A stretch of 64,000 nucleotides of DNA from NCBI RefSeq assembly GCF_030144855.1, contig NC_082709.1, forward strand, positions 24,056,001 to 24,120,000, given 5' to 3'. Both the position numbers and the translations under genes were made by a program. Numbering within the stretch: the stretch's first letter is position 1; the number at the start of each line of letters is the position of its first letter. This document shows, piece by piece, positions 2,731 through 28,400 of this stretch. The DNA is from Hypanus sabinus (lineage: Eukaryota). The notes under the pieces are model-generated. The model was not told the origin of the DNA. It made no database searches and saw nothing but the letters and a program-made list of their open reading frames with translations.

Positions 2731-3005
2731 AGGGTGGCACAGTAGCATAGTTGTTAGCACAATGCTTTACAGTACAGACGACCTGGGATCAATTCCCAAC
2801 GCTGCCTGTAAGAGGCTGTACATTCTCCCCATGATGGCATGGGTTTCCTCTGGGTGTTCCGGTTTCCTCCGACAGTCCAAAGACGTACCGGGCGGTAAGT
2901 TAATTGGTCATTGTGAACTGACCTGCAATTAGACTGGAATTAAACTAGGGGATTGCTGGGCGGTGTGGCTCAAAGAGCCTAGTCCATGCTGTATCTAAGC
3001 AAACA
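2731..3005 (+). mobile_element. tRNA-derived V-SINE (HE1-like)
   Basis: tRNA-like head with A/B-box-like motifs (TGGCACAGTAGC; GGATCAATTCCC), V-domain core TTCTCCCCATGATGGCATGGGTTTCCTCTGGGTGTTCCGGTTTCCTCC; related copies at 28135 and 49420. Confidence 0.8.
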
Positions 3006-3715
3006 GACAAATAGATAGTTGGATAAAGGAATGGGTGAGCCCAAGTAAAGAGTAGAAAAATAGAGTTGTGCAATAAAACTCCAATAATCCAGACTATTAG
3101 ATACAATTCCCTTAAATCTCCAAAAAACTTCAAATTTATTTTTTTATTTTAAGTAGTTAGGCAGTAAACTAAAATCTTCTTATAAACCCATTTAGTTTCA
3201 AGGAAATGGCAGCAACTAGTACCTGGGTGTACAAGAGTGTTTGAGGGAAATGGCACCCAGATACATTGGGACCTGCGGAATGCCGGATTAGTGAAATGCC
3301 AAATAACAGAAGGATCACATTAAGCAATAGCTAACCACCTCATCATACCTTTAAAATATCATGCAAGTCAGTACAAGTTAGATAATAATGAACCAGAAAT
3401 ATTAAACAAGTAGCAAGTGAAATTTTGATAAAGTAATATACTGTACAGACACATAAAATAAAGGGTACAGATAAATGTACAGGAATTAACTTGTACAGAA
3501 CAGTTGAGCACTTCTGCTTCTAAAGTGAGACGTTTAGTAAACCTTCAGGCAAAGTTGCATGTTTGCAAGTGTGGGATTGTCAGGATCATCAACATCTTCA
3601 TCTTGAAAAATAAGTGAAGCATCAGGAACTGGTGCTGAAATTGGCACAACAGTTTCTTCAAAAACTGTTGATGTTGGTGGCAGCACATCTGGGTGAGCAG
3701 AAGAAGTCAAAGAAT

Positions 3716-3883
3716 GGAGGTCTTCTATATGCCACATTTCACGCGACCGCCAGGCAACCGAGGATTCAGTGCTGAGCTCTTCCCTCTTCACTTGCAGTTA
3801 CTGAGGAATCCTCGTTAGTTTCTTTTCCACCGCTTCGTTAAATGCTTAAATTCAGCGGGTTGGCCACGACTGATCTGAGGGTC
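3716..3883 (-). pseudogene. Dispersed 5' fragment (about 170 nt) of 28S rRNA
   Basis: Minus strand reads GACCCTCAGATCAGTCGTGGCCAACCCGCTGAATTTAAGCAT...GCGGTGGAAAAGAAACTAACGAGGATTCCTCAGTAACTGCAAGTGAAGAGGGAAGAGCTCAGCACTGAATCC, the conserved eukaryotic LSU 5' end with substitutions. Confidence 0.93.
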
Positions 3884-4040
3884 ATAGGCAGAAGAGAACG
3901 GAGCACCGACCAGACAACGCCGGAGGGCAGTGCATGACTGCCGGCAGGCGGGCGAGAAGGTGGACCGACCCAGTGCGCGCCAGCTCTCCCGCCGCTGGCG
4001 GATGAGACAGGCAGGTGCCGGGCAGCCGCAGCTCACGCAA
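3884..4040 (-). other. Probable ITS2 3' remnant adjoining the 28S fragment
   Basis: GC/CpG-rich block directly 5' of the 28S start on the same strand, where ITS2 lies in the rDNA unit; identity inferred from position and composition. Confidence 0.55.
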
Positions 4041-4260
4041 ATGATATTAATAAATGTAGGAAAACAAGCAGGAATCGCCTGTCTGTGCTTACAAGAGCGG
4101 GCCAACATGTGAACAGATCTAGCGCAACCAAAACAATGCGCAGCAGATTGGTACGGTGGCCCAGGAAATTTGACATTACAGCTGCGCGGAAAATTTGAAA
4201 TTAGTGCCGGATTATCGAAGGAACCAAATTACAGATAATCAGATTAGTGAAGGTCAACTG

Positions 4261-4716
4261 TACTATATTCTGCCATCATATTTGACCTACCAAAATGAAC
4301 CTCTCCACACTTATCTGGGTTGATCTCCATCTGCCACTTCTCAGCCCAGTTTTACATCCTAGAAGTGTCCTGCTGTAACCTCTGACAGCCCTCCACACTA
4401 TCCACAACACCCCGAACCTTTGTGCCATCAGCAAACTTACTAACCCATCCCTGCACTTCCTCATCCAGGTTATTTATAAAAATCACAAAGAGTAAGGGTC
4501 CCAGAACAGATCCCTGCGGCACACCACTAATCACCAACCTCCATACAGAATATGACCAGCCTACAACCACCCTTTGCCTTCTGTGGGCAAGCCATTTCTG
4601 GATCCACAAAGCAATGTCCCCTTGGATCCCATGCCTCCTTACCTTCTCAATAATCCTTGCAAGGGGTACCTTATCAAATGCCTTGCTGAAAACCATATAC
4701 ACTACATCTACCACTT
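4261..4716 (-). mobile_element. CR1 LINE reverse transcriptase fragment
   Basis: ORF 4352-4726: VDVVYMVFSKAFDKVP...SGVPQGSVLGPLLFVIFINNL...KFADGTK. Confidence 0.9.
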
Positions 4717-4724
4717 CCTTCATC

Positions 4725-5108
4725 AATGAGATACGCCTCTACCAAAGATCCAAGGCGCTCCTTCCCTCCATTGGCCTGCAAGTCACCCTCGAACAAGGTG
4801 TAGCACCTACCTAGCACCCCCCACACCCCCCCCCCGGACCAGATCACGCAAAGCCATGGCAGCAGGTGGTGGATGGTCATATGAACAGCTGGTGGATATC
4901 ACAAGTCCTGGTTATGCAACCACTGATGCCAAGCAGACAATCTCTGAAGAGTATTGATAATGACTGGGGCTACCCATCTTGTATAGGCACTGCTCCGAAG
5001 AAGGCGATGGCAAACCACTTCTATACAAAAATTTGCCAAGAACAATCATGGTCACGGATAGACCATGATCGCCTATGTTATTCAACACAGTGCTTAACGA
5101 TGATGATT
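4725..5108 (+). mobile_element. SINE-like repeat with RTE-type motif
   Basis: GAAGGCGATGGCAAACCACTTC resembles the motif of RTE/BovB-associated SINEs; ends in (TGA)n. Confidence 0.45.
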
Positions 5109-5824: not shown

Positions 5825-7109
5825 TAGGTGCCAGCAATAACTCTGAAACACAAGCCTTTACTGAAAGACTTCTTAATGAGAACCAATTCATCATATTCAT
5901 CATTTGATATCATACAGAATCAATGACTGAACAGAACTCTACCTGTTGTTTTCAGCACATTTTCTCAACAAACTCTTGAACTCAGAATGCGATAATACAA
6001 TATTCCTCACTTTACCACGCTCTTAGTCCATTTTTCTCAGTAATTTATTGCCTTCCAAGCCTTTATTTGTGATTTTTCAATTTTCAAATTCAATATTCTA
6101 TTGGGTTAGGTAACATTGCTCACATGAGCAAATTGCTTATTCTCCAAAGTTCACTTTTAAGAACACAAGACAGAGGATTGGAACATATCTGTGATCAAAT
6201 CATTGGCCTCGTTCACTTAACTGTTTTATTCCCTCAATTCCCCTTACATTCTAAACTCAATGTTAGCCTTAGATATACAATGAATATTTCTCTCAATAAT
6301 CTCAAGTCATATATGTTTCTTCAGAAATGCTTTGTTTCTAAATTTGAGTGTAATTCAGGCTGACAGACTAATAAAGAGAGCATTGCACAGTTATAGGTAC
6401 TGTCTTTCTGAAGGATATCAAAACAAGGCACATATCAAACAATTCCAAAAGTCTCAATACCAACATATAATTCTCAAGTAGCAAAACTGATAAGATTATC
6501 TGATAATTTATTCCCTCACCTTGGACAATCTGATTATTCTGTTTCTGTGTTACAACAGTTATCGATTTCTAATCTACCTAATTAACGGAAATGCACTGTC
6601 ATCTGCAGATCTGTCAACTACAATATGCAGTAAAACTTCTCCCCATTTAGCCTCTCATATGTTGACTTCAATTCAACATGTAATTTATATACAATTCCTT
6701 TTGTTCATCTCTTCCCATTCCTACAATTTCCTCTAGTCCAAATTGATATATACTGTGTGACCAACCCAGTAATGTTTATTACCAAGTCCATCGATATTTA
6801 CCTCAAGATTGCTATCTTTTGCCAAATCTACAATACCTTCAAACTTCTGTTACTTCAGAACTTCACTTTTTTTTAAAAAAAAGCTTTGAACATCCATAGG
6901 TCTGTGCCTCCAACCTGTTTAACTGCAGACCATTTGTTAACCAAAACACAGCAGATTGTTTTTTTTTAAATGTTAAAAAGCATTTTAAAAAATGATCTTC
7001 TCCAACAAGAGAGAGTCTAACCATCCACCTTCGGCACTCACTGTGACACACAGTGAATCACAGTGACACAGCACTGAACTCCAACACCCTGAGCTCCCAC
7101 ATTGACATG

Positions 7110-7498
7110 TGAATTGCTATGCTACCATCACTCTACTATAGGAAGAAGTTAATAAACTGGAAAGAGTGCAGAAAAAAAAATCACACATGGATGTAACAGG
7201 GTTCAAGAGATCAAGTTACACAGGGAGGACATATAGTTTGGGACTTTATTCCTTCATGCATAGGTGACTGATGGGTGATCTTAAAATCACAAAGGAATAG
7301 GCAGAATGAATCCATTCAGTCTTTCTCTCAGGGTTGCAGAATCAAGAACCAGATATAGTTCATGAACTCAGCAGGTTGTGCAGCATCCGTTGAAATGAGC
7401 AGTCAACATTTCAACAGATGCTGCACGTCCTGCTGAGTTCATCCAGCTTGTTTGTACGTGTTGATTTGACCACAGCATCTGCAATGTACTTTGTGTTT
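7110..7498 (+). mobile_element. Decayed CR1 3' fragment with an inserted Penelope-type hairpin (7356-7498)
   Basis: AAACTGGAAAGAGTGCAGAAAA CR1 motif; AACTCAGCAGG...CCTGCTGAGTT inverted repeat flanked by ACCAGATA direct repeats. Confidence 0.6.
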
Positions 7499-7511
7499 AC
7501 CAGATAAAACA

Positions 7512-9040
7512 TAGCACCTTGAAAAAGTATTCAGCCCCCATGACTATATTTCACATTTTACTGCCTCGTTTTCTAAATTTAAGATGTATTGAAGTAGGAT
7601 ATTTTGAGCTAATCAACAAAACATTGTGCATATCAAATCAAAAGAAACATTTCAAAACTTGTCAACAGGTTTGTATTTTGTAATTACTATGCTAACTTTC
7701 CTCAAGTGCAATACTGTATATTACCTTACCAACACACCCAATTTGCTGATGTAGAAAATAGGTGGATCACCTATTTTCCACCAATTAATAAGAATAAATA
7801 TTCCCTCTGTAAGGTCCAATGGTATGGTAGATTTTCAACAGACCAAACCAAAATGAACACACAAGAGCATTCAAGACAAGTCAGAGAAATGATAATAGAG
7901 AAGCACAAATCTGGGGAAGGGTACAACACCATCTCAAAGACACTGAATGCACCTCAGAGCTCAGGGAGTCCATTGCAAAACTACAGTCACTCTACTGAGA
8001 CTAGGCTGCCCCTCTAAATGTAGTCACCAGAGAAGAATGGCACTTGTAAGAGAGGCTACTGTGACTCCAACGGTCACTAAGTGAGCTGCAGAAGTCAGTG
8101 GCTGCACCTGGAGATGAAGATCATAGCTGCACAATCTCTAAGGCCTTGCACAAAAAGGGTATTTACGGAAGAAAAGCAATGAAGAACCCCTGGCTAAAAA
8201 AAAAGCCTATACTTCTCCATTAACACTTTGCAAAGCGCCACTTAGAAGATACTGTAAAGATGTGGAAGGTCTGACTAGCAGTCGGATTAGACTAAAGTTG
8301 AACATTTTGTCCCTCAACAATAAGCACTATGTGTGGTATAAGTCTAATACTATGCCTCAGACAGGTAACACCAACCCTTCTGTAAAATATCTGAAGGTAG
8401 CATCATGCTACCGGGATGCTTTTCAGAAGCAGGGACTAGAAATCTGGTCAGCATTGATGAGAGGATGTATGCTACAAAACACAGAGAGATCGTGAAATAA
8501 AAACCTACAAGCCTCTATGAAAAAACTCAAACTGGGGAGAAAGTTTGTCTTTCAGTAAGGTAAGGACCCATGTAGTAGCTTCAAATGAAGAAAATTGATG
8601 TCCTTGAGTGCCCTAATCAGAGTCCTGACCTTAACCCAATTGAAAGTCTCTGGCAAGACCTCAGGATTACTGTTCACCGCGCTCCCCACCTAAATGGGCA
8701 CAGCTTGAGCAACTTTGGAAGGAATGGGCAAATCTTACCATCACATTATGCAAAGCTAATAGAGACTTATCCAAGTAGACTACTGGCTGTAATAGCTGCA
8801 AAAAGAAGTTTAACTACGTACTGAGCAAAGGGGGATGAATACTTTTGAACTGCTGACATTTGAGTTTTTGAATTTTTAGTTTTTTATGCTTTACAATTTT
8901 CCATTTTTGGGGTCTACTGTGGAAAAAAAGGAGCATGTAATTCAAAATAAAAATTCTCAGTAAAATTGATCAAAATCCCTTGTTGTAATACTCATTTATG
9001 TGAACAAAGTTAGGTGCTGAATACTTTTACAAAGGCACTG
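7512..9040 (+). mobile_element. Near full-length defective Tc1-family transposon
   Basis: Terminal inverted repeats (GCACCTTGAAAAAGTATTCAGC / GCTGAATACTTTTACAAAGGCACTG-TA); frameshifted transposase 7853-8824 with MNTQEHSRQVREMIIEKHKSGEGYNTISKTL (HTH) and CPNQSPDLNPIE (third catalytic motif). Confidence 0.92.
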
Positions 9041-9089
9041 TAGGTTTAAAGTGAAAGATTTAATAGGAATCCAAGGGGCTTTAGTTAAA

Positions 9090-11035
9090 TGACTTTAAAG
9101 CAGATGACTGTGTTCCCAAAGATCATTCAGTCTTCCTCAACCAGAAGCCCTGCATGAACCAATAGATTAGAAATCTGCTGAGGGCTGGATCGGTGATGTT
9201 CAGGATAGACAATCCAGGAAAATATATTTAAAAATTTCAGGTATGACATCTGGAAAGCCATCTCACATGGAAAGTGGCAATTCTGTATTAAACTTGAATT
9301 ACGGTGAGATGCCTGACAACTGTGACAGGACTTGAATGCCATCATCTCCTACAAAACAAAATCAAACATCAAGGTTTCACTCCAACATGAGCATAATACC
9401 TTTTATACTTGCTTTGATCGACAGAATATGAAGATACTTTCACGATCATTTACAAGCACCAATGGTCCTGTGATTTCAGTCTCTGAGGCCTTCATGAAAG
9501 CATCCTTCAGGAAGGTGAATCCACAGAAAGCACCTGGCTCCAGCGTATCTGTCTGACTATTGAACACCTGTACTGGACGGAGTTTTTCTGGCCATCTTCA
9601 ACCTCTCACTTTAATAGTCCGAGGTACCCACCTGCTCAACAGACTTCATTCATACTAGTGCCTAAGAATGTAGTAACGTACCTCAATGACTATCATACAG
9701 TAGCACTTACATTTACTGTAATAACTGATTTTGAGAGACTGGTCACAAAGCGCATCAATTTCTGCCTGAAGAGTCACCTGGATCTGCCCCAATTTGCCTA
9801 CCGTCATAACAGGTCAACAGCAAATGCCATTTCATTGATTCTTTACTCACCTCTGGAATAGCTGGACAATACAAAAGGATACTCTTTGTTGACTATAGCT
9901 CACTATTCAACATCATCATTCCCTCAAAACTCATCACTAAGCTCCAAGAACTAGGCCTTGATACCTCCCTATGTAACTGGTCTCTTGCTTTCATCATTTG
10001 CAGACGCCAGTCATTATGGATTACCTGTTAATAACATCTGCTCCATAATAACTATCAGCACAAGTACACCACAAAGCTTGAGTGCTTCACCCCCAGTTTG
10101 ACTCACTTTACAGCTATGACTGGGCAGCTTAGTACAGCTTCAATACCATACTTAAGATTGCCGACAACACTGTAGCTGGCCAAATCAAAGGTGATGGAGA
10201 GATTTGAATGGTGCCACAACAACAACCTCTTACTCAACATCAGCAAAACCAAAGAGCTGATGATCAATTCCAGGAGGAAGAAGCCAGAGGTCCATGAAGC
10301 AGTCCTCATTAGGGGATTGGAAGTGGAAAAACTAGATAACTTTAAGTTCCTTGACGTTCCTATTTCAGAGGATCTGTCCCAGGACCTGCACGTAAGTGCC
10401 ATCACAAAGAAGGCATGACAATACCTCTACTTTCCTTGATACTTGCATAGATCTGGCATGTCACAAAAATGTTGACAAGTTTCTAAACATGGAAAGTGGA
10501 GAGCATCCTAGCTCACTACATCATAGCCTGGAAAAGACTACAGAAAGTGGTGGATACAGCCCAGTCATTCACAGGCAAAGCCTTCCCCACCATTGAGCAC
10601 ATTTACATGGAGCACTGTCAGAAGAAAACAGCATTCATCAAGGACCTCCAGCATTCAGACCATGCTCTCTTCCCACTGCTACCATTGGGCAGGAGGTACG
10701 GGAGCCTTAGATCCCACAGCACCTGTTTCAGGAACAGTTTTAACCCTAGAACCATAGGCTCATAAATCAGTGAGGATAACTTCCCTCACCACACCTTGAA
10801 ACTGATTCCACGACTTAGACTCACTTTCAAGAACTCTACAACTCATGCTCTCAGTATTATTTATTATTTTTGGAATAATAAAAATTGCACAATTTGCCTT
10901 CTTTTGCACATTGGTTGTTTGCTTATCTACACATTTTTAATAAATTCTAATTTTTTTTTTAAACTTTCCTGTAGATACCTGTAAGAAAATGAATCTCAAG
11001 GTAGACATACGTATTCTAATAAATTTTACTTTGAC
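9090..11035 (+). mobile_element. 5'-truncated Rex1/Babar-type LINE
   Basis: Fragmented ORF2: [55 protein letters not shown]; AATAAA tail near 11018. Confidence 0.85.
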
Positions 11036-11044
11036 TTTAAAGGG

Positions 11045-11756
11045 GTAAAGGGGAAACAATTTGGAAGCACAGAGGAAGAAGTATTCTGAAGGAAAGATGA
11101 CATGACCATGGCTAAAAAGGAAGTCAAAGTCAACATAAAAACCAAAGGTAGGGTATACAATAGAGCAAAAATTAGTGAGAAGTTAGAGGATTGGGAAGCT
11201 TTTAAATACCAACAGAAGGCAACTAATGGAATATGAAAGTAAGCCAGCCAAGAATATTAAAGAGGAGACCAGAAGTTTCTTCAGATAAGGTGTAAAAGAG
11301 AGGTAAGAGTGATTATCAGACTATTGTACTGGAAAATGATGCTGGAGAGGCAGTAATGAGGGATAAGGAAATGGCAGAAGAACTGCATGAGTATTTTTGC
11401 ATCTGTTGTCACTGTGGAAGACACTGCAGTATGCTGGAAGCCCTAGATATCAGGGGTCACAAAGTGTGTGAAGTTACCAATACTAGGGAGAAGGTGCTTG
11501 CAAAACTGAAAGGTCTGAAGATAAGTCACCTGGACCAGATGGTGTATTCCCCAAGATTCTGAAAGAGAAGGCTGAAGAGATTGTGGAGGCATTAGTAATG
11601 AACTTTCAAGAACAACTTGATTCTGAAACAATTCCAGAAGACTGGAAAGTGCAAATGCCACTCCACCCTTCAAGAAGGGAGAGAGGCAGAAGAAAGGAAA
11701 CTATAGGCCAGTTAGTCTGACTTCAGTGGTTGGGAAGATGTTGGGGTTGATTATTT
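11045..11756 (+). mobile_element. CR1 LINE ORF2 fragment
   Basis: MRDKEMAEELHEYF..., GGAAACTATAGGCCAGTTAGTCTGACTTCAGTGG (GNYRPVSLTSV). Confidence 0.85.
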
Positions 11757-13190
11757 AGACCATAAGACCATATAGAGCAGAATTAGGCTACACTGCTTCA
11801 CCAGCCAATCATGGCTGATCCCTTTTTCCTCTAACTCAACCCCATTTCCCAGCCTTCTCCCCATAACCTTCAATGCCATGTCCAATCAAGAATCTATTAA
11901 TCTCTGCCTTAAATACACCCAAACACCTAGCCTCCACAGCTACACGTGGCAACAAATTCCACAAATTCACCACCCACTGGCTGAAGAAATTTCTCCACTT
12001 CTCTATATGGAATGAGTGCCCCTCTATCTTGAGGCTGTGCCCCCTTGTCCTGGACTCTCCCCCCCATGGGTAACATCCTTTCCATATCTGCTCTGTCTAC
12101 ATTCAAAAGGTTTAAATGAGCTTCCCCTTCATCCTTCTAAATTCCAGTAAATACAAACCCAGAGCTATTAAACGTTCCTCGTATGGTAACCCTTTCATTC
12201 CTGGAATCATCCTTGTGAACCTCCTCTGGACCCTCTCCAATGTCAGCACATTCCTAAGATGAGGAGCCCAAAACTGTTCACATACTCAAAGTGAGGCCTC
12301 ATCGATGCCTTATAAAGCTTCAGCATCACATCCTTGCTCTTGTATTCTAGACCTCTTGAAATTAATGCTAACATTGCCTTCCTCACCACCGACTCAACCT
12401 GTAAGTTAACCTTTAGGGTGTTTTGCACAAGGACTCCCAAGTCCCTTTGCTTCTCAGACTTTTGGATTTTCTCCCCATTTAGAAAGTAGTCCGCACATTT
12501 ATTTCTACTACCAAAGTGCATGACCGTGCATTTTCCAACATTGTATTTCATTTGCCACTTTCTTGCCCATTCTCCTAATCTGTCTAAGTCCTTCTGCATC
12601 CTACCTGTTTCCTCAACACTACCTGACCCTCCACCAATCTTCGTATCATCTGCAAACATGGCAACAAAGCCACCTATTTCAACATCTAAATCATTTATAT
12701 ACAGCTTAAAAAGTTGTCCCAACACTGACCCCTGCAGAACAGCACTAGTCACTGGCAGCCAACCAGAAAAGGATCCTTTTATTCGTACTCACTGCCTCCT
12801 GCCAATCAGCCAATGCTCTAACCATTTTAGTATCTTTGCTGTAATACCTTGGCCCCTTAACATGGTAAGCAGCCTCATGTGGGGCACCTTGTCAAAGGCC
12901 TTCTGAAAGTCCAAATATACAACATCCACTGCATCACCTTTATCTATCCTACTTGTAATCTCCTCAAAGAATTCCAATAGGTTCATCAGGCAGGATTTTA
13001 CCTAAAGGAAACCATGCTGATTTTGTCCCATCTTGTCCAGCGTCACCAAGTACTCCATCACCTTATCTTTAACAATTGACTCTAACATCTTCCCAACCAC
13101 TGAAGTCAGACTAACTGGTCTATAATTTCCTCTCTGTTGCCTTCCTCCTTCTCTAGCACCATGCCAGAGTCGAATGATTTTTGAAAGATC
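11757..13190 (-). mobile_element. CR1 LINE 3' half (RT domain to tail)
   Basis: ORFs 13002-13250, 12789-12986, 12243-12752: NYRPVSLTSVVGK, VYLDFQKAFDKVPH, QGSVLG, MFADDTK. Confidence 0.92.
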
Positions 13191-14189
13191 AACAGCTCCC
13201 AGCAAATCAACACCATCCAGAACACAGCAGCCCATGAACCACCTAAACACTCATTCCCTCCACCACCAACACAATTAACAAATTACATTACAGTTACTGA
13301 TCCAAATTACTCTACCACTACCTTACTGCAAGACCCTGGAATTCTTTCCCTTAACTCTTCTCTCCATCAAGCCACTTCTTTGGGAAGTATAGCTTTAATC
13401 TAGGTTTTAGAATATATGGCAGTGTCATTGTGTGCTTGATAATGCTCTTAATAACATCTGCACGGTTTTAAAGACTATAAAACATAGCAGAATTAAGCTG
13501 TTCAGCCCACCCAGTCTGCTCAATATTGATGCAACAGTACAATATTGTACATAACGTTAGTGAATATTCCTCAATGGAAATCTAGTCTAAAACTAATTCT
13601 TAAACGTGCGTCATAATGCACCTTTCCCCACCTTCAAATCCTCCATCTGGGTGAATGCAGTTTTGCTTATTTTGCTCGGGGCAGTACAGTATTTTGGAAA
13701 CTACTGCCCCTGATCAAAATGTCAAATCTGCCTGGTCATTGGCATGTGACAGTACAGTATCCAAAACTTCGAGTAAGCAAACTGTTCAGGCCTATGATAT
13801 ACATATACAATGCGCGGAATTCAATAAATTGAGGTTTCTGCGAGAAGGATTCGACCACGAATTTAATGTTTAGGCAAAGCTCTACCAGTAGCTCTGACAA
13901 TTTAAGATTCGAAGCGGCTTTTGTGGATCATTATATACAATTACAAAATCAGGAGGGTTATTGGGACTTAAATGTTGTGACTTTTGTATGATTTCACAGA
14001 GATTTACGTCAAGTTTACACTAACATTCAAACCAGATTAAATGGAATCCTAAAATCAAGGAATCAAACGTATAAAATCATTCTGTAAGTCTTCGGGAGAG
14101 CAGCAGTCACGTCCTGTTTTGTACCCGGTCCTCTGCGTTACTGGGAAACGCAAGGAGTTTACAAACAAGTGCAGCTGCTGCTGGAAGGT

Positions 14190-15020
14190 CAGTGACTACC
14201 CAGCGAATACGGACCAGGACCAGGACCACTTCAAGCCAAGGCCAGAGTCCGCAGCCCTGGAAACGGAGATCACCGGAGAGAGGAGCCGCGTCTGTGGTCG
14301 GTCACTCACCCGCTGTCCCGCATCACGCTGCTGTCCCCGCAATCGCAGGCCCCGCCCGCTTGACTCCGAAACATGTTGAAATCGTGGCCCGTGTGCTCCC
14401 CGGCGTTGAAACACTCGGCGCACAAGGACATGCACGGCGAGATCCCGCACGTCCGACACCGGTACGCCACGAAGTTGGCCGTCCACACCAAACCGCACAG
14501 GGTGGCGTTGTCATAGGCGCGCACCATTTTACAGAAGTCATCGAAGCTCTCGCCGCCGGCCATCAGGCACTTGCACCACTCGATCACTTCGGCCTCGGCC
14601 ACCGGCCTCTTGGGGCTCAACACACTGTCCAGCAGCTCACCGAGCAACTGGGCTCCTTTACCGTCCGACCGAGAGCACTCAGCCTTCAGCGAAGCAGCCA
14701 CACTCCGCTTGTCCCGGCGTAGCAACGGCACCGCCATGACGGCCGCCCCCCACCCCTCCCCCCTGGCTGGCTGATCCCTGACTTATTTTGTTCTTTGACC
14801 AGCGTCGCGCCCGCTCTCGCGAGATCCCGCGCCGCGCCGCGCCGCGCCGCCTCCGTTCCCGACTCGGCCCGGCCGCCGCCGTTTGAAGAGGCGTGATGGT
14901 GCGTGAGGTTCTGCAGATCCTGCACACCTGCCCTCCAAATAATTCCTCTCGCTCCAGGCCCCCTGAGTTTCTCCAGCGTTTTCTTTGAAGCGCCTGCTGC
15001 ATATCCTACGGCGGTGAACC
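14190..15020 (-). promoter_or_regulatory. CpG island / UBR3 promoter and 5' UTR
   Basis: High CpG density in an otherwise CpG-depleted window; perfect TCTCGCGAGA palindrome 14815-14824; (CCGCG)n run 14827-14850. Confidence 0.8.
14310..14737 (-). CDS. UBR3: E3 ubiquitin ligase UBR3, first coding exon (UBR-box zinc finger); rest of the gene lies to the left, no further exon recognised in the window
   Basis: LCGLVWTANFVAYRCRTCGISPCMSLCAECF..GEHTGHDFNMFRSQAGGACDCGD is the UBR3 UBR box; good Kozak GCCGTCATGG; donor GG|GTGAGT at 14309. Confidence 0.97.
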
Positions 15021-16572
15021 TTCTGAGGATTTGAGTTGTCCGGCTTTCACATGAAGATTGCAATAGATTAAGAAATGTGTATTGGGCTCCACATCAACCG
15101 AAAGTGTCTGTATACGGGAAATGGATAAAATTAAACATATGCATACGGAACTCTTCCTGTGGATTCTGTAGTGGTGCTTTGGTGTTGCTGTTGGATGAAG
15201 CAGAGAAAGAGCTGTCGACAAAATACCCAATTTGAAGGCTTTCAACTAACAGAGAAAGGTATAATAACGTATCATGTAAATTACGACATATAGTTACACG
15301 TACTTAAAGAAACAGTGTTGTACTGATGTACATGATGACGGCATTTGATACAAACCATCAACTATCTATATATCATCAGTTGACTACTAGCTTGAAAATA
15401 TAGAAACAATTATTTACAAAAGCATATTTTAATTGAAATGTACACTTATTTAGGTTCTTTCCCAACTGCAAACCAAATCTTTAACCTATATTGAACATCA
15501 TTACTGTATTTACCCGGGAACTGACTATTCATTTGGATCACTTCTTCAGGCTGACAGCTTAATATTTGATGCCACTTCCTGTCACCAGTGCCGTATTGAA
15601 AAGTTTAAAGCCCTAGCATAGTTTTGAACATAAACCCCAAAATGGGTTTATATATTTTGTCAGCTATCTTGTATCTACATTTATAGATCTATTCCATACA
15701 TGAATGAATAACTACAAACTCCACTCTGGGTGCTCAATACCGGGATCTTTTATCAATCCTGAAGTTTTACAAATTAAAACTTCTGACAACTTTCCCTTTT
15801 TGAATCAGTTCCAAGGCTCCCAAGTTTGAAATGTTTTCAGCCTGTCTTGTTGAAATCTGTTCAGCAAGAAGTTTTGGCTGGATGACTATCTGGGTGTCTT
15901 TGCTATTACCTAGCTCACGCTGGTGCTGCGCGGGAGGGGGAACTTTGGGGTTCTCAGGTTTAACTGTCGTGCATTCTTTGGGGCTCTTCTATTTTCGTGG
16001 ATGTTTTGCGAAGAAAGGGCATTTCAGGATGTATATTGTATACTTTTCTCTGACATTCAATTGGACCTTTGAACCTTTGAGTGGTTAATCCATCTTGGCT
16101 TCCTCCTGAAATCCCCACCGTCACATAAACCAGCTGTTGACTGATTCAATTCACTCTGCATGATATTAATAATAATCAGCTAAGATTATATGACTGAGGA
16201 AAAGCCAACAGCATTTTGGCACTAGAAATGAAGTGACTTGAAGAATCCATTCACTGACGTGCTTATTGCTGGTTTTTATTGTTTTTATTTTTGATTATTT
16301 CAGCTCTTTACTGCATTATTTTCATAGCAGATGCTGTGAAGGCAGCAAAGTGGAAAAATCCGGTAAACTCTCAGAAGGGAAGAATGAGTGACAAATGTAT
16401 AAAAACATATGTCTGATTACAGGAAAACTAATTGCATATTGATTCAAATAAATGAATCTAGAAATAATGTAAGTGAATCTACTATTAGTATTTACATGGT
16501 ATTGAAATTAAGTTGCTTAACATTTTGAGTCAAGTTTTATCTCACATTTGCTGAATTCCCTATAGAAATATA

Positions 16573-17108
16573 CACTCAGTAGCAAGTTTATAGTTCCTCC
16601 TGTACCTAATAAAGTGGCCACTAAATGTATGTTCATGGTCTTCTGCTGCTGTAGCCCATCCACTAAAAGGTTTGAAGTTTTGTGCACTCAGAGATGCTCT
16701 TCTGCACATCACTGTTGTAATGTGTGGTTATTTGAGTTACTGTTGCCTTCCTGACAGCTTGAACCGGTTGGGCCATTCTCCTCTGGGCTCTCTCATTAAC
16801 AAGGCATTTTCACCCAAAGGAATGCTGCACACTGGATGTTTGTTTTTTCTTGACACTGTTGGGCATGAAAATCCCAGAGGAGCAGCGGTTTCTGAGATAC
16901 TGAACCGAGGCCATCTGGCACCTACAATCATTCCATGGTCCAAGTCACTTAGATCACATTTCCTCCCTATTCTGATGTTTGGTCTGAATAACAACTGACC
17001 ATATCTGGGTGTTTTTATGCATTGAGTTGCTACCACATGACTGGCTGAGTAGATATTCACATTAAAAAGCAGGTGTACAAGTGGACCAAATAAAGTGGCC
17101 ACTGAGTG
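16573..17108 (-). mobile_element. Internally deleted Tc1-family element retaining the transposase N-terminus
   Basis: TIR CACTCAGTGGCCACTTTATT at the ends; ORF 16737-17126 GRKCDLSDLDHGMIVGARWPRFSISETAAPLGFSCPTVSR is a Tc1 HTH domain. Confidence 0.85.
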
Positions 17109-17379
17109 TCTATGCATAATACACATGTATCAGATTTCCTTCCTACTGCTCCAAGGACTATGACCCAATCAAAACACAAGTATTTATTAATTTTATTAAT
17201 AGGCACACTTATTTTGCAACCCTATTCTGCGGGGGAGCTCAGGAACTGAGGTTGCTGAATCATTGCCCTGAGGAAAGGTTGAGAAGGCTCCTCTTGTGAA
17301 ACATTTTGCATACTTTTTTGTGATTTCCCCTGAAAGTCATTAGAAGATCATATTATTTATATCATTTCATCAAAAAAAC

Positions 17380-18030
17380 ATTATTATCAAAGGCCTAGGC
17401 CTTTGTCGCTGTACACAAACCTGAGATTAATTTTCTTGCAGGCATTCAGTGTAAGTGCAAAGAAATGCAATAGAATCAACGAAAGTCTACACCCAACAAG
17501 ACGGACAAACACTAATGTGCAAAAGACAACAAGCTATGCAAATACAAAAAGAGAAATAAGATAATAACAATTAAATAAGCAATAAATATCCAAAACATGA
17601 GATGAAGAATGCTTGAGAGTAAGTCCACAGGATTTGGGAACAGTTGAGTGATGGGGTGAGTGAAGTTATCCTCCATGGTTCAAGAGCCTATGGTTCAGGT
17701 GGTAATAACTGTTCTTGAATCTAATGGTTTGGATCTTGAGGCACATCTTCCTGACTGCAGCAGTGAGAAAAGAACAAGGCCTGGGCGGTGAGGTTCCTCG
17801 ATGATGAATGCTGCTTTCTTGCAACAGTGTTCAATAGATGTCCACAGTGGTAGGGAGCACATTACCCGTGATGGACTGGGCTGTATCTACTACTTTTTGT
17901 AGGCTTTTCCGTTCATGGCATTGATGTTTCCATACCAGGCCATGATGCAACCAATCAATGTATCTCCACCACACGTCTGTAGAATTTGTCAAAGTTTTAG
18001 ATGACATGCTGAATCTTTGCAAACTTCAGA
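17380..18030 (-). mobile_element. Rex1/Babar-type LINE 3' fragment
   Basis: RKSLQKVVDTAQSITG motif shared with the copy at 10496-10765. Confidence 0.75.
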
Positions 18031-18109
18031 TGTTTTTGCTGAACAGATTAGGCTATTTTCTTTTCTTTCCTTACTTACAATTCAGCAGTAGCAGTTTAAT
18101 CTCTTTAGA

Positions 18110-18660
18110 AACATGAGAAAGTCAGCAGACGCTGGAACTCCAAAGCAACAGACACAAAATGCTAGAGGAACTCAGCAGGTCTGATAGTGTCTATGGAAAT
18201 GAATAAACAACTGATGTTTTGGGATGAGACCCTTCTTCAAAACTGAAAAGGAAGGGGTGAAAAGTGAAGCCAGGTGGGCAGGAAAGATAAAGGGCTGGAG
18301 AAGAAGAAATCTGATAGGAGAGGAGAATGGACCATTTGAGAAAGGAAATGAGGAGGAGGCCCAGGGGGAGGTGATAGGCAGTTGAGAAGAGGCTGAGAGG
18401 ACAGAGTGAGGAATAGGAGGGGGAGGGACTTGTTTTTTGCTAGAAGGAGAAATTGATATTCATGCCATCAGGTTGGAAGCTACCCTAAAGTGTTGCTCCT
18501 CAACCATGAGCATGGCCTCATATTGGCACAAGAGGAGACCATATACCGACATGTCAGAACACGAATGGGAATCAGAATTAAAATGTTTGGCCACCAGGAA
18601 GTTCCATTTTTGGCAGATGGAGCAGAGGTGCTCATTGAAGCAATTCCCCAATTTATGACT
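18110..18660 (-). mobile_element. Penelope-like element 3' fragment (GIY-YIG endonuclease C-terminus plus terminal repeat)
   Basis: KLGNCFNEHLCSI...VAKHFNSDSHSCSDMSVYGLL..EEQH; terminal repeat CAAAATGCTAGAGGAACTCAGCAGG. Confidence 0.8.
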
Positions 18661-19429
18661 GGCACCTGTATATACAGTAACTCCCATCAGCATCTTTTTA
18701 CCTTTGCAAAAACCTATACATAATTGCTGAGTAAAAATCCAAGTTTATTATCATTGACATTTATCATGAAATTTCTTGTTTTGTGGCAGCAGTACAGTGT
18801 AATACATAAAATGTAATATAAATTATGTATTATTTATACATAAGTAAAATAAGTAGTAAAAAAGGGAGCAAAATCAAAAATAGTGAGGTAGTGTTCATGG
18901 ACCATTCAGAAATCAGATGGTGCAGGAGAAGTAGCTGTTCCTAAAGCATTGGGTGTAGATCTTCACCACCAACCCCTCCTTCCTAATAGTAGCAGTGAGT
19001 AAAGAAGTCCTGACATATAGAACTTCATCCCAAAGATAAATGATTACAGGGAAGGGAAGGAATAGAACTTCAGGCTGTCCAAAGAAATGCTTGTTATTAT
19101 CTATCTAATGTTGAGTCCCATTCACCTATTACCCATGTGGCTCTTGACTTGTAAAGGACACTAGAAATGGTTTTGCTAAACAAAGGGTGATATATTTGTA
19201 AATTGTAGTTGTAATCTCCTCCAGGCTTACAACCTTCTGGTGAGATCTGTATTTTTGTCTGCTTAAATATTTAAATATTCCACTTTTGACAGAAATACCT
19301 TCAGCTTTAAAGGCCTTAGATTTTAGAATCTCCTCCCTAAAGCTCTTTGTACCTTTACCACTTTGTTCTACTTTAAGATGTTCTTGCTCGTTTACTACTC
19401 TTTCAGGTATCTGCTCCAGGTTATTTTAA

Positions 19430-20985
19430 GGCTTACTGTTACTGGACAATAGCAATACCTATGTCAGATTGCTATTCATTGATTACAGCTCAGTGTTCAA
19501 CCATCACACCCTCAGTTCTAATCAACAAGCTCCAAGACCTGGGTCTTTCTACCTCCCTCTGCAACTGGATCCTTGACTTCCTTATCCAGAAACCAGAGAC
19601 ATCAAAAATAAAATCTCTTTCTCGCTGACAATTAACTCTGGCACACCTCAAGGATACCTGCTGAGCCCACTGCTCTACTCTCCCTACAGCCACAATAACT
19701 GTGGCTAGGCACAGCTTAAATACCATCCGTAAATGTGCTGACAATACAACCAGCATGAACATCCAACTCACAGACCTCCATTGATAACCCAGCCCCCCAC
19801 TTACCCCCATCCCTATCTATTATTTTAGTCTGGTTCTCTTTCTCTCTCTTTTCCCCCCTCACTATAATCTCCACCCAGCCCTAATTTTCTTTCTCTTTTA
19901 TTTCCCATAATTCTCCACCTTCCCCGTAGCCCATTTCCCTCCAGTCTATCACTTCCCAGCTCTCTGCTTCATCCCTCCCCCCACTTCTTATCCCCTCTCC
20001 ACCATCCCATGTTACTTCACTCCTGCTGAAGGGTTTCGGCCCGAAACGTCGTCACTAACTCCTCCCATTGATGCTGTCTGGCCTGCTGAGTTCTGCCAGC
20101 ATTTTGTGTTTTTTTAAAAATTTCTGACAATACAACTATTGTTTGCAGAATTTCAGATGGTGGTGAGGAAGCATACAGGAGTGAGATAGATCAGCTGGTT
20201 GAATGGCAGCAACAGGCTTGCACTCAACATCAGTAAGACCAAGGAATTGATTGTGGAATTCCAGAAGGGAATGTCAAGGAAAAACACACTACTCCTCACC
20301 AAGGGATCAGCAATGGAAAGGGAGAGCAGTTTCAAGTTCCTGGTTGTCAACGTCTCTGAAGATCTATCCTAGTATTGATACATATTGATACAATTACAAA
20401 GAAGTCACAACAGTGGTTATATTTCATTAAGGGTTTGAGGAGTCTTGGTGAGTCACCAAAGACTCTCACAAAATTTTTTACAGGTGTACCATGGAGAGCA
20501 TTCTAACTGGTTGCATTATCATCATCCGGTATGGAGGAGCCACTGCACTGGACTGTAAATAGCTACAGTAGTTTGCAAACTCAACCAGCCCCACCATGGG
20601 CACTAACCTCTCCAGCATTAAGGACATCTTCAAAAGGTGATGCCTCAAAAAGCTGTCAACTCTTCCCATTGCTAGCATCAAGGAGGAGGTAAAGAGCATG
20701 CCTCTTCTCTTGACTACCATCAAGGAGAATGTACAAGAGGCCAAAGTCACACACTCAGTGGATCAGCTTCTTCCCCACTGCCATCAGATTTCTGAATGAA
20801 CAATGAGCCCGTGGACCCTAACTCGCTTTTTTTCTTTTTTTGCTCGTTTTTAGCATTACTTAATACCATTTTTATATTTTTACTGTAACTTATAGCTACA
20901 GTTTTTATTATGCATTGCAATGTACTACTTCCACAAAACATCACATTTCACAAAATATACCATTGATATTAAATGATTCTGATTC
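19430..20985 (+). mobile_element. Rex1/Babar-type LINE interrupted by a Penelope-like insertion (19751-20123)
   Basis: RT motifs on both sides; 13-bp direct repeat CTGACAATACAAC at 19738-19750 and 20124-20136 flanks the insert. Confidence 0.8.
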
Positions 20986-21529
20986 CAAAAATTTCATTTG
21001 TTGAGCTTTCTGTGACTTACCCCTTCTACCTATGTTATTTTTGTTTTTTGAAGATTTTTATTTATTCATTTTCAGGTGATCAAGGCCAGCATCTAATGCA
21101 CATCCTAATCGTCCTTGAAAAAGTGGTGGTGAGCCATGGTCTTAGATCACTGCAGGTATTGTGTTCATAAGGTGCTGGTGCACAAATCTGATTGAGTAAA
21201 TACAATGAATTTTATAGGTTATGTACATTGTAGCTACTTAGTTGGTAGTGAAAGGAATAATGTTTAGGGTGATTGATGGGATGGCTGTCAAGTGGGCTGC
21301 CTTGTCCTGAATGTTCAGCTTCTTGAAAATGCACACATTTCTGACTTACACTTTGTTGCTGGTGTGCTTAGGATAAATAGATTCTGGAATACTGAGTATG
21401 TCCTTTCTTGCAACGTGGAAGGAAGCCTATCAGTCTTGTTGCAAAAGTCATGGGGATTTTTATATGCAGGTAAATTGGGGAAATCAGATTGGCACTGGAT
21501 TCCAAGAGAGAGAATTTGAAGAATACCTA

Positions 21530-21795
21530 TGAGATGTAAAAGAGTAAAAGAGAGGCAAGTGTAGATATTAGACTGCTGGAAAATGATGCTGGAGAGGTAG
21601 TACTGGGGTACGAGGAAATGGCAGATAAACTGATTAAATATTTTGCATCAGATTTCACTGTGGAAGACACTGGCAGTATTCCAGAAGTTCAAGAGTGTCA
21701 GGGGGTAGAAGTGAGTGCAATTACAGTGTTACTAGGAAGAAGTGCTTGGGAAATTTAAAGGTCTAAATACAGATAAGTCACCTGGGCCAGATAGA
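21530..21795 (+). mobile_element. CR1 ORF2 fragment
   Basis: Clearly similar to 11290-11540 (CTGGAAAATGATGCTGGAGAGG...GAAATGGCAGA). Confidence 0.75.
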
Positions 21796-22824
21796 CTACA
21801 CTCCCATCCACCTATTTGATGAATCCAAAGGAGCAGTAGAGACTGATACAGTTTGGCACCAGCAGCAGCGCTGGAATTGCCAGTGCGCATTCAACTCAAT
21901 ATAGGACTGCCTCAAGGACTCCAGCTCTGGATTTTTCCCATGAGGTTTACTTCCAAAGCCTTCCCCTTGAGTGGATATAGCCGCCAGGCAGTGGAGGTTT
22001 GAGATCAGAGATTTCCTTCTCCAGGATGAGCTGCCAATCATAGCTGAGAAGCCCCATCTGTCCAAAGGTCTTAGGAATACACTTAACATTTAACACCATA
22101 TTTGATGAGGTGAGTCCTTCCAATGGGGTCCAATGTTTTCTCACTAATACGTACAATGTTATATATTTGTGTTCTTGATCACCTGACATTTACCTTCTCC
22201 AGTGCAAAGAACTGGAATTTCACTTACATAGCTCCTAACAAAGTAGTGGTTATGCATTTGCTCTGATGAATAAAATAATATAAAACCCATTTGAGAGTCT
22301 GTCAAAAATTCACCATCTGAATGTTTATTATTGGGAGGTTTTTAACACCCTCCCAGGACAACACACTAAGTTCATGTTCAGGATATTTTCAACCTCAAAA
22401 GTCCAAATCGAAAGGCTATTACTCACAAAATAACCACACTTACTAAAACTGTGCTACTAAAAGGGCAATCACTCTGTTTTTTATCCTTGCATTTGTGACT
22501 TCTGTGATCTCAAATACAGGCTTACTCATGCTTCACTTCTGTAATTCAAGACCACAGCCACTCTCAGTTTCCTAATTGCAGGACTATTCTAGATCACTGC
22601 TGCTGATCTGAGCCACTTTTCAATTTGGTGCTTGCTGCTACATTACCTAACTCAATAGTCAAGAAGAGATAACACCATCAACTTGCTCCATATGAGTAGG
22701 GGAAGGGTATACAGTCAATTGCGTGCTTAGCAGCCTTCAGTGAGGTGAAGTGCTTTACTTAAGTAGTAAACTCTGGAACTTCCAGCTGGGAGTATTTGGC
22801 TGCATTTCTGGAGGGATACCACCC

Positions 22825-26374: not shown

Positions 26375-27150
26375 TTAGAAACATAGAAAACCTACAGCAC
26401 AATACAGGCCCGTCAGCCCACAATGCTGTACCGAATACATACTTACTTTAGAAATTACCTAGGGCTACCCATAGCCCTCTACTTTTCTAAACTCCATGTA
26501 CCTATCCAGGAGTCTCTTAAAATGCCTTATCATATCCAGCTCCACCACCGTCAGCGGCAGCCACTCACCACACTGTGTAAAAAAGCTTACCCCTGACATC
26601 TCCTCTGTACCTACTTCCAAGCACCTTAAAACTGTGTCCTGTCATGTTAGCCATTTCAGCCCTGGGAAAAAGCCTCTGACTATCCAGACAATCAATGTTT
26701 CTTATGATCTTATACACCTCTCATCCTCTGTCGCTTGAAGGAGAAAAGGCCAAGTTCACTCAACCTATTCTCATAAGGCATGCTCCCCAATCCAGGCAAC
26801 ATCCTTGTAGATCTCTGCACTCTATCTATAGTTTCCACATCCTTCCTGTAGTGAGGTGACCAGAATTGAGCATAGTACTCCAAGTGGGGTCTGACCAGAA
26901 TCCTTTATAGCTTAAACATTACCTCTCGGTTCTTAAACGCAATCCTATGAAGTCCAATGCTCTGTATGACTTCTTAACCACAGAATCAACCTGTACAGCA
27001 GCTTTGAGTGTCCTATGGACTCGGACCCCAAGATCCCTCTGATCCTCCCAAGTGTCTTATCATTAATACTATATACCATTATATTTGACCTACCAAAATG
27101 AACCACCTCACGCTTATCTGGGTTGAACTCCATCTGCCACTTCTCTCATA
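26375..27150 (-). mobile_element. CR1 LINE 3' end (METTL5 intron 1)
   Basis: MEFNPDKREVVHFGRSN; tail seen as TAGAAACATAGAAA on plus. Confidence 0.85.
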
Positions 27151-28134: not shown

Positions 28135-28400
28135 GGAGCAGCACAGTAGTGTAGTGGTTAGCACAATGCTTTACAGTACCAGAGACATGGGTTCAATTCC
28201 TGCCACTGCCCGTATGGATTTTGTTTGTTCTCCCCGTGACTGCGTGGGTTTCCTTCAGATTTTCCGGTTTCCTGCCACAGTCCAAAGACTTATCGGACAG
28301 TATGTTAATTGGTCTTTGTAAATAGTCCCATGATTAGTCCCATAAATTGGAGGGGAGCATTTGCTGGGCAGAAGGGCCTGGTCTGTGCTGCATCTCAATA
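28135..28400 (+). mobile_element. HE1-like V-SINE
   Basis: Aligns by eye with 2731-3005; B-box GGTTCAATTCC. Confidence 0.8.

What the first reader, a model, noticed from the sequence alone, without database searches (positions are those of the whole stretch)
3264..4260. DNA transposon carrying an ITS2-28S rDNA junction fragment
About 170 nt of recognisable 28S 5' end plus about 150 nt of GC-rich probable ITS2 sit inside a roughly 1-kb element with a CAGTTGACCTTCACTAATC terminus, a TA flank and repeated subterminal TGCCGGATTA motifs at both ends, in UBR3 intron 1. If the GC-rich block is ITS2, the donor was rDNA or pre-rRNA rather than mature 28S. Inference: a Pack-type non-autonomous Tigger/pogo element that took up rDNA by gap repair and may have dispersed it. 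It differs from SINEs derived from the 28S 3' end and from R2/Pokey elements, which insert into rDNA. The fragment is sense to UBR3 transcription and includes the segment that pairs with 5.8S. Dispersed copies would also contain the conserved ACCCGCTGAATTTAAGC LSU primer site and could confound ITS2/28S barcoding. The left TIR is missing and the CR1 abutting the right TA does not continue on the left, which suggests a later deletion.
Basis: partly seen in the sequence, partly recalled or inferred. Interest (0 to 1): 0.75.

Follow-up and report, generated by a model that had tools for sequence, protein, structure and literature searches.

The report
rDNA piece carried by jumping-gene family
This is one old copy of a roughly 1-kb repeat, present at hundreds of sites in this ray genome and its relatives, that carries the first ~170 bases of the 28S ribosomal RNA gene plus the spacer before it; it is a tidy case of a mobile element spreading host DNA, not a new mechanism.

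Summary
On the minus strand, 3883-3715 is the 5' end of 28S rRNA from its first base (Rfam, E 1e-14). It is preceded by 157 nt of 68% GC sequence (4040-3884), which is by position the end of ITS2. Both lie inside a 997-bp unit (3264-4260). That unit ends in CAGTTGACCTTCACTAATC next to a TA, at the exact point where a LINE reverse-transcriptase remnant is interrupted.

Contigs from four related organisms show that the whole unit, rDNA junctions included, is a repeat family. Its summed depth is hundreds of times that of the unique flank. Paralogous contigs 10-18% diverged bridge the junctions. The same insertion sits at the orthologous locus in three relatives, so this is not a one-off rDNA insertion.

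Three points remain unproven:
- The Tigger/pogo label. Only one clean terminus exists, the left end is at best a 64% inverted match, no transposase remnant was found and no parent element was found.
- The ITS2 identity, because no reference sequence was available.
- Gap repair as the capture route.

The scan has already noted the same family at five or more other sites of this genome. Verdict: a real, multicopy Pack-type DNA-transposon-like family with rDNA cargo, of moderate interest.

The parts
3262..3263 (.). TA next to the left end; possible target-site duplicate
   Evidence: Read. It matches the TA at 4261-4262. Weak on its own (a 1 in 16 chance).
3264..3290 (+). Putative degenerate left terminal inverted repeat (CATTGGGACC...CCGGATTA)
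   Evidence: An alignment anchored at the ends, against the reverse complement of 4224-4260, scores 1 against -8.5 +/- 3.1 for shuffles; 13 of 2000 shuffles reach it. A free local inverted alignment is not significant (397 of 1000). Family depth starts in the bin 3269-3335.
3281..3322 (+). Subterminal 42-nt block with three TAATCYGG-like motifs; a direct copy of 4205-4246
   Evidence: 74% identity over 43 columns; 0 of 1000 shuffles reach the score.
3296..3714 (-). AT-rich, CpG-poor half of the element, origin unknown. It holds a 60-codon open stretch (3716-3537) with no relatives
   Evidence: GC is 33-42% and CpG o/e 0-0.14. It is part of the family: depth 13,000-22,000 against 19 in the unique flank, with contigs at 3335-3703, 3409-3670 and 3329-3603. 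Pfam gives nothing. phmmer against 1.8 billion proteins gives only 3 spurious repeat-protein hits.
3715..3883 (-). 28S rRNA gene, positions 1 to ~160 (5' end), decayed
   Evidence: Rfam RF02543: 69.5 bits, E 6e-15; model position 1 lies at 3883. Majority letters of the laid contigs at 3829, 3836, 3839, 3841, 3863, 3869 and 3879 restore the canonical 28S reading.
3884..4040 (-). GC-rich block contiguous with 28S position 1; probable 3' end of ITS2
   Evidence: 68% GC and its position upstream of 28S base 1. Contigs bridge it to 28S (records 27, 28) and to the element arm (records 4-6, 10, 18, 27-30). No reference ITS2 was available. Its fold is no better than shuffles.
4041..4260 (-). Right arm (5' arm on the minus strand). 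It contains the terminus CAGTTGACCTTCACTAATC (4260-4242), the 42-nt motif block (4246-4205) and a 25-nt tandem pair (4152-4201)
   Evidence: The family majority differs from this copy at 4202 (C) and 4227 (G).
4261..4262 (.). TA at the insertion point inside the LINE
   Evidence: 190-329 LINE contigs per run continue leftwards of 4261 with one shared consensus ending ...CCATTAA. This gives the empty site ...CATTAA|TACTATAT. The LINE copy at 27067-27145 in this window reads the same.
4261..4729 (-). LINE (CR1-like) reverse-transcriptase remnant that hosts the insertion; it has no continuation on the left
   Evidence: 88% identical to 27067-27145. The peptide MEINPDKCGEVHFGRSN.. matches an RVT_1 ORF at 12246-12752. 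Depth is about 1-3 million. The left flank 3001-3268 has unique depth and no LINE similarity at the DNA or protein level.

Best explanation
3264-4260 is one old copy of a ~1-kb non-autonomous, cut-and-paste-type repeat family, most likely of the Tc1/mariner superfamily and pogo/Tigger-like. Its interior holds ~325 bp copied once from the host rDNA unit: the last ~157 bp of ITS2 plus the first ~169 bp of 28S.

The likely history has four steps:
1. An element lost its interior. The break was patched by copying from rDNA, or possibly from pre-rRNA, by template switching during repair. This step is inferred.
2. The chimera kept ends that a transposase supplied in trans could use, and it was amplified to hundreds of copies in an ancestor of at least four related organisms. 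Multicopy status and shared junctions are shown; transposase mobilisation is inferred.
3. This copy landed at a TA inside a LINE in a UBR3 intron. The exact interruption is shown.
4. Later the LINE's continuation on the left was lost. This happened either by a deletion flush with the element, or by recombination between two nearby copies. The loss is shown; the route is inferred.

The copy is now neutral, decaying intronic DNA. No function is indicated.
For: rDNA identity and exact start.

Family status:
- Summed contig depth over 3269-4206 is 7,000-22,000 in X15, against 19 in the adjoining unique flank. The ratios are similar in X16, X19 and X1.
- Single-copy-depth contigs 10-18% diverged from this copy bridge the GC-block/arm junction at 4040 (records 4, 5, 6, 10, 18, 27-30).
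- Other contigs bridge the 28S/ITS2 junction (records 27, 28) and the 28S/AT-half junction (record 3). In addition, 24-29 contigs per run span 3715.

Orthology: contigs about 98% identical run from the unique left flank into the element up to 3331 in three organisms (records 9, 17, 25).

Insertion signature:
- The LINE consensus continues past 4261 in 190-329 contigs per run, giving the empty site CATTAA|TA.
- The terminus begins CAGT and TA is present on both sides.
- The anchored inverted match of the two ends is reached by 13 of 2000 shuffles.

Precedent: Pack-TIRs exist in animals, with TcMariner the second commonest carrier (PMC8277862). Pokey carries IGS- and ITS-derived repeats (PMC4912750). 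MER6 is a mariner MITE with foreign cargo (PMC6887750).
Against: - Only one terminus is clean. The inverted match of the left end is 18 of 28 columns, and the free local inverted alignment is not significant.
- The best similarity between the two ends is a 42-nt block in DIRECT orientation, which a simple TIR model does not predict.
- No transposase remnant and no autonomous partner were found.
- The family's true termini and TA duplications could not be read from other copies, because read laying gives no consensus at the ends and the right end is swamped by LINE depth.
- The LINE is missing on the left, so the two flanks do not reconstitute an empty site.
- ITS2 identity rests on position only.
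Confidence: 0.7

Rival explanations
1. The unit is a dispersed repeat with rDNA cargo, but it is not a Tc1/mariner/pogo TIR element. It could be a fragment of a larger composite repeat, or an element moved by another route (retroposition of a chimeric transcript, another DNA-transposon class, or segmental copying). On this view the CAGT/TA end is coincidental, or belongs to only one component.
For: - There is no significant free inverted match between the ends, and the strongest end-to-end similarity is direct.
- No transposase trace was found.
- CpG o/e differs sharply between the halves: about 0.9 for 3715-4260 against about 0.1 for 3296-3714. This hints at parts of different origin.
- The flanks do not rebuild an empty site.
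Against: - The LINE is interrupted exactly at a TA beside a CAGT terminus, with the empty-site consensus known.
- TA is present at both ends, and the anchored TIR alignment is reached by only 13 of 2000 shuffles.
- Family depth starts and stops at the proposed ends.
- There is no poly-A or LINE-type tail. There is no 8-bp, TTAA or 3-bp duplication, and there are no Helitron or LTR ends.
- Contigs run across 3500 and 3715, so the two halves travel together.
Confidence: 0.2
2. The GC-rich block 3884-4040 is not ITS2. It would then be element sequence, or other GC-rich DNA joined to a 28S fragment that happens to start at base 1. In that case mature 28S rRNA could have been the donor.
For: No ITS2 reference could be aligned. 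The block folds no better than shuffles (z 0.55). One contig, identical in two organisms, leaves the element after 3967, and another replaces 3922-3935, so homology to whatever the source was is patchy.
Against: The block abuts 28S base 1 without a break and is GC-rich like vertebrate spacers. Contigs carry it joined to a more canonical 28S 5' end (loose ends at 3880). A junction placed exactly at base 1 by chance is less likely than a contiguous copy of rDNA.
Confidence: 0.15
3. The rDNA piece is a one-off insertion into this copy only, for example filler at a local break.
For: None after testing.
Against: Nine listed paralogous contigs from four organisms span the 4040 junction and two span 3883/3884, at 5-18% divergence. 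Earlier first-stage notes list the same architecture at five other places in this genome; those notes are unchecked.
Confidence: 0.02

Closest known systems
Pack-TIR / Pack-TYPE elements (Pack-MULE in plants; animal Pack-TIRs of Tan et al. 2021, PMC8277862)
   Same: A non-autonomous DNA-transposon frame whose interior is replaced by a few hundred bp of host DNA. The cargo (~325 bp) is close to the reported median of 224-305 bp. Template switching during repair is the accepted origin, and TcMariner is the second commonest carrier in animals.
   Different: The cargo is rDNA (spacer plus the start of 28S), not a gene fragment; that paper never mentions rRNA (0 occurrences). Reported animal multicopy Pack-TIRs have a handful of copies, whereas here depth suggests hundreds. 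The parental TE and microhomology at the breakpoints were not available here.
Pokey (piggyBac superfamily, Daphnia)
   Same: A DNA transposon that carries sequence derived from rDNA spacers, both IGS and ITS (PMC4912750).
   Different: Pokey is autonomous, uses TTAA sites and inserts INTO 28S. This unit is non-autonomous, sits at a TA in a LINE within a gene intron, and carries a 28S-ITS2 junction rather than spacer repeats.
MER6/MER6A (mariner-derived MITE carrying a V-SINE domain)
   Same: Tc1/mariner-type ends flank a foreign, highly conserved sequence that spread by riding the MITE's amplification (PMC6887750).
   Different: MER6's cargo is a SINE core. Its parent mariner element was identified, whereas no parent was identified here.
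SINE28 and other rRNA-derived retroposons
   Same: Dispersed copies of part of the large-subunit rRNA gene outside the rDNA arrays.
   Different: SINE28 derives from the 3' end of 28S, is Pol III-transcribed and is retroposed (PMC4994717). Here the piece is the 5' end plus upstream spacer, embedded between non-rDNA arms, with no tail.
Tigger2-type pogo elements
   Same: The first ~10 bases of the terminus (CAGTTGACC) and the TA target resemble Tigger2. This is recalled from memory and was not tested.
   Different: No pogo transposase, no CENP-B-like domain remnant and no second clean TIR were found.

Membership tests
Tc1/mariner superfamily (pogo/Tigger group) | TA target-site duplication flanking the element | tested here: inconclusive
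   TA is at 3262-3263 and 4261-4262. The right TA is the LINE's own target TA. The left flank is not the LINE, so duplication of a single site cannot be shown.
Tc1/mariner superfamily (pogo/Tigger group) | Terminal inverted repeats, typically starting CAGT/CAGG | tested here: inconclusive
   The right end is a clean CAGTTGACC.... The left end CATTGGGACC... matches in 18 of 28 columns when anchored (13 of 2000 shuffles), but the local inverted alignment is not significant.
Tc1/mariner superfamily (pogo/Tigger group) | A DDE transposase with a CENP-B-like DNA-binding domain, in the element or in an autonomous partner with the same ends | tested here: not met
   No Pfam hit on the element's ORFs. 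The 60-codon open stretch has no real relatives among 1.8 billion proteins. No other copy of the terminus exists in the 64-kb window. A partner elsewhere in the genome could not be searched, so a non-autonomous member is not excluded.
Pack-TIR / Pack-TYPE | An internal segment copied from an identifiable host (non-TE) sequence | tested here: met
   28S positions 1 to ~160 identified by Rfam.
Pack-TIR / Pack-TYPE | TE sequence on both sides of the cargo, shared with a cargo-free parent TE | not testable with these tools
   Both arms are part of the repeat family. No cargo-free parent could be looked for without the genome assembly.
Pack-TIR / Pack-TYPE | Multicopy: the same cargo with the same junctions at several loci | tested here: met
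   Paralogous contigs bridge the junctions in four organisms, and depth is hundreds of times the unique depth.
rDNA-specific elements (R1/R2, Pokey) | The element is inserted at a fixed site inside the rRNA gene | tested here: not met
   Here the topology is reversed: an rDNA piece lies inside the element, which lies in a LINE in a UBR3 intron.
rRNA-derived SINE (SINE28 type) | Derived from the 28S 3' end, retroposed, with a 3' tail | tested here: not met
   The piece is the 5' end plus upstream spacer, and neither end has an A-rich or LINE-type tail.

The most novel reading that the evidence does not exclude
The capture may not be a random patch. Two unrelated DNA-transposon families in this genome each carry one end of 28S together with the adjoining transcribed spacer: this family, and a hAT family with the 28S 3' end plus 3' ETS that is known only from earlier unchecked scan notes. 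The cargo here starts ~157 nt upstream of 28S base 1, roughly where a 5'-extended pre-28S processing intermediate would begin. This leaves open that pre-rRNA intermediates served as repair templates (RNA-templated break repair in or near the nucleolus), or that these elements were repeatedly active inside rDNA arrays.
Probability: 0.08. Interest if true: 0.65.

Novelty: new member of a known kind. Interest (0 to 1): 0.35.

Why it matters
It shows that a vertebrate (ray) genome holds hundreds of scattered, decayed look-alikes of the ITS2-28S junction, moved there by a mobile element.

- For annotation: rRNA hits in introns are not rDNA orphons.
- For read mapping and rRNA depletion: such copies can attract rRNA-like reads.
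- As an example: it is an unusually high-copy animal Pack-type element with non-coding cargo.
- For dating: the frozen ITS2 copies could date the capture and give an ancestral spacer sequence.

It does not point to a new mechanism or to a function for this copy. The risk to ITS2/28S barcoding is small, because the unit lacks 5.8S and the primer-site region is decayed in this copy.

Tried and rejected
- Transposase remnant. The open stretch 3716-3537 (60 codons) looked like an acidic transposase tail. Pfam found nothing. phmmer over 1.8 billion proteins returned three repeat-protein hits (LVIVD, AAA_12, Big_3_5) that are compositional. Rejected as evidence.
- Left TIR at 3501 (CAGTTGAGC, inverted-repeat pairs I6 and I7). 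Rejected, because family contigs run straight across 3500 and no TA precedes it.
- LINE continuing on the left, which I suspected by eye. There is no DNA similarity to the LINE copy at 26880-27070 (866 of 1000 shuffles as good), no protein similarity to the RT ORF, and only unique depth.
- ITS2 support from folding. The block is no more stable than shuffles, so this is uninformative.
- 28S extending beyond 3715. Rfam posterior probabilities fall to 0.2-0.3, so it is left open between about 3715 and 3680.
- Other superfamilies. There is no 8-bp (hAT), TTAA (piggyBac) or 3-bp (PIF) duplication, no Helitron TC...CTRR ends, no LTR TG...CA ends, and no long IR/DR arms.
- Fetching other copies. The exact 22-mer of the terminus gave 0 hits in JGI metagenome contigs. 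The findings look-up by sequence was blank. No other copy exists in the window.
- Literature. No paper was found describing a Tigger or Tc1-type element with 28S/ITS2 cargo.

Full report
**What is in the sequence**

I read the region on the minus strand. From right to left it contains:
- a terminus CAGTTGACCTTCACTAATC (4260-4242), unique in the window;
- a 220-bp arm (to 4041) with a 25-nt tandem pair (4152-4201);
- a 157-nt block of 68% GC (4040-3884);
- the 5' end of 28S rRNA;
- an AT-rich, CpG-poor stretch (3714-3296);
- a short left end (3295-3264).

Rfam's eukaryotic LSU model matches 3859-3781 at 69.5 bits, E 6e-15. On a narrower stretch the alignment starts at model position 1 at 3883 and stays credible to about 3715. 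So the first ~169 nt of 28S are present, starting at its first base, and the GC-rich block lies where ITS2 lies in an rDNA unit.

**Gene context**

A UBR-box exon (zf-UBR, E 3e-18) lies at 14306-14737 on the minus strand. The element is therefore downstream in a UBR3 intron, and its 28S piece is sense to UBR3. I did not check that no exon lies between them.

**Is it private to this copy or a family feature?**

I laid Logan contigs of four runs from four coded organisms on 2800-4800 at 80% likeness. All of these runs are contigs, so depth is not a copy number.
- The left flank 3001-3268 has single-copy depth (19, 17 and 6).
- From 3269 to 4206 the summed depth is 7,000-22,000 in X15, with similar ratios in the other runs. 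This covers the AT-rich half, the 28S part, the GC block and the right arm.
- Contigs of single-copy depth that differ from this copy by 10-18% bridge the GC-block/arm junction at 4040: records 4, 5, 6, 10, 18, 28, 29 and 30. Record 27 also bridges it, at 5% divergence, and may be the ortholog.
- Records 27 and 28 also bridge the 28S/ITS2 junction.
- Record 3 (3494-3767), and 24-29 contigs per run at 3715, bridge the 28S/AT-half junction.
- The majority letters at 3829, 3836, 3839, 3841, 3863, 3869 and 3879 restore the canonical 28S reading, so this copy carries private decay.

The rDNA piece with its junctions is therefore a property of a repeat family in at least four related organisms. This removes the 'one-off insertion' rival. 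Changes are dominated by transitions, as expected for old neutral DNA.

**This insertion**

Contigs about 98% identical to the window run from the unique left flank into the element, up to 3331, in three organisms (records 9, 17 and 25). They share a 27-nt indel after 3091. The insertion is thus orthologous and older than their split.

On the right, 190-329 LINE contigs per run align from 4261 and continue leftwards with one consensus ending CCATTAA. This gives the empty site CATTAA|TACTATAT. The window's own second copy reads the same. The right flank is the end of an RT domain. The element therefore interrupts a LINE exactly at a TA.

The LINE does not resume on the left. There is only unique depth, no DNA similarity and no protein similarity. 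Either a deletion flush with the element's left end or recombination between two nearby same-orientation copies would produce this. I cannot tell which.

**What kind of element?**

In favour of a Tc1/mariner-type (pogo/Tigger-like) element:
- a CAGT terminus;
- TA on both sides (3262-3263 and 4261-4262);
- a family boundary that falls between 3264 and about 3295;
- a length (997 bp) like the 964-1034 letters that earlier first-stage notes give for other copies (unchecked);
- an end-anchored inverted alignment of 3264-3300 with 4260-4224, reached by only 13 of 2000 shuffles.

Against it:
- that alignment is 18 of 28 columns over the first ~27 nt;
- the free local inverted alignment is not significant (397 of 1000);
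- the strongest similarity between the ends is a 42-nt block with three TAATCYGG-like motifs in DIRECT orientation (3281-3322 versus 4205-4246, 74%, 0 of 1000 shuffles).

Subterminal motifs in both orientations are known in some TIR elements such as Ac (my own knowledge), so the direct block is odd but not fatal.

No transposase trace exists. Pfam is blank. The 60-codon open stretch finds only compositional hits among 1.8 billion proteins. The resemblance of the first ten bases to Tigger2 is from memory and untested. I therefore file the family as 'probably Tc1/mariner superfamily, non-autonomous', not as a proven Tigger.

**ITS2**

I had no reference ITS2 for the species.

In favour:
- unbroken contiguity with 28S base 1;
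- spacer-like GC content;
- contigs that join the block to a more canonical 28S start (loose ends at 3880).

Unclear:
- One high-depth contig (8,821 in X15, 2,008 in X1) lies on 3909-3936 with 14 nt replaced.
- Another contig, identical in two organisms, departs after 3967.
- These may be the true rDNA or collapsed family unitigs.

The RNA fold is no better than shuffles. I rate ITS2 as probable, about 0.8. If it is ITS2, mature 28S rRNA cannot have been the donor. rDNA and pre-rRNA cannot be told apart.

**Mechanism**

Shown:
- a chimeric arm-rDNA-arm unit;
- multicopy status with shared junctions;
- insertion at a TA.

Inferred:
- an internally deleted element was patched from rDNA by template switching during break repair;
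- it was then amplified by a transposase supplied in trans.

This is the Pack-TIR route described for animals. TcMariner is the second commonest carrier there, and multicopy cases are rare and small (PMC8277862). Two DNA-transposon precedents are Pokey, which carries IGS- and ITS-derived repeats (PMC4912750), and MER6, a mariner MITE with SINE cargo (PMC6887750). SINE28 differs: it comes from the 28S 3' end and is retroposed (PMC4994717).

**Unexplained**

CpG o/e is about 0.9 over 3715-4260 but about 0.1 over 3296-3714. The two halves therefore differ in original composition or in history.

**Prior notes and limits**

The scan had already noted the same architecture at five other places of this genome. 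One follow-up there reached the same 'cut-and-paste family with rDNA cargo' reading. I used these notes as leads only; the family status above rests. They also say the genome is a stingray's, which I did not verify.

The genome assembly itself could not be searched, so the family consensus, its termini, the parent element and the ITS2 alignment remain to be done.

**Verdict**

This is a real, correctly described feature. It is a multicopy Pack-type element with rDNA cargo. The superfamily and the ITS2 label are probable, not proven. The mechanism is ordinary, the cargo and copy number are unusual, and the interest is moderate.

Noticed in passing
window 7361-7443: An ~80-nt near-perfect hairpin that scores below threshold against several unrelated Rfam hairpin families on both strands (mir-5856 at 40.9 bits, psbJ 3'UTR). 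It is probably a palindromic MITE-like repeat and not a microRNA.
   Followed up: no
window 2800-2933 (also 28141-28322 and 49446-49563): A very high-copy short repeat just left of the unique flank. Summed contig depth is about 250,000 in X15, with two more copies at 77-79% identity in the window. It looks SINE-like.
   Followed up: no
window 3091/3092: Three related organisms carry 27 extra bases here relative to the window (GAAACTTAGATGGTGCCAGATTTGCGG). This is either an indel that distinguishes the window's genome from its relatives, or a deletion in the window.
   Followed up: no
window 3296-3714 versus 3715-4260: There is a sharp CpG contrast inside one repeat unit: o/e 0-0.14 against 0.83-0.93, with a window mean of 0.28. 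It is not explained by a single insertion age.
   Followed up: partly
window 14306-14737 (minus): The first coding exon of UBR3, with the UBR box (zf-UBR E 3e-18), sits in the window's GC peak.
   Followed up: partly
window 16737-17126 (minus) and 12243-12752 (minus): A Tc1-like transposase N-terminal remnant (by eye) and a LINE RT ORF (RVT_1, E 2e-6). Both are further transposable-element debris in the same intron.
   Followed up: partly
window 4729-4840: The LINE homology ends near 4729. LINE contigs leave this copy at 4711 and their consensus stays similar to it up to about 4728. What follows is different sequence with a C-rich run at about 4820-4837. Its identity was not examined.
   Followed up: no
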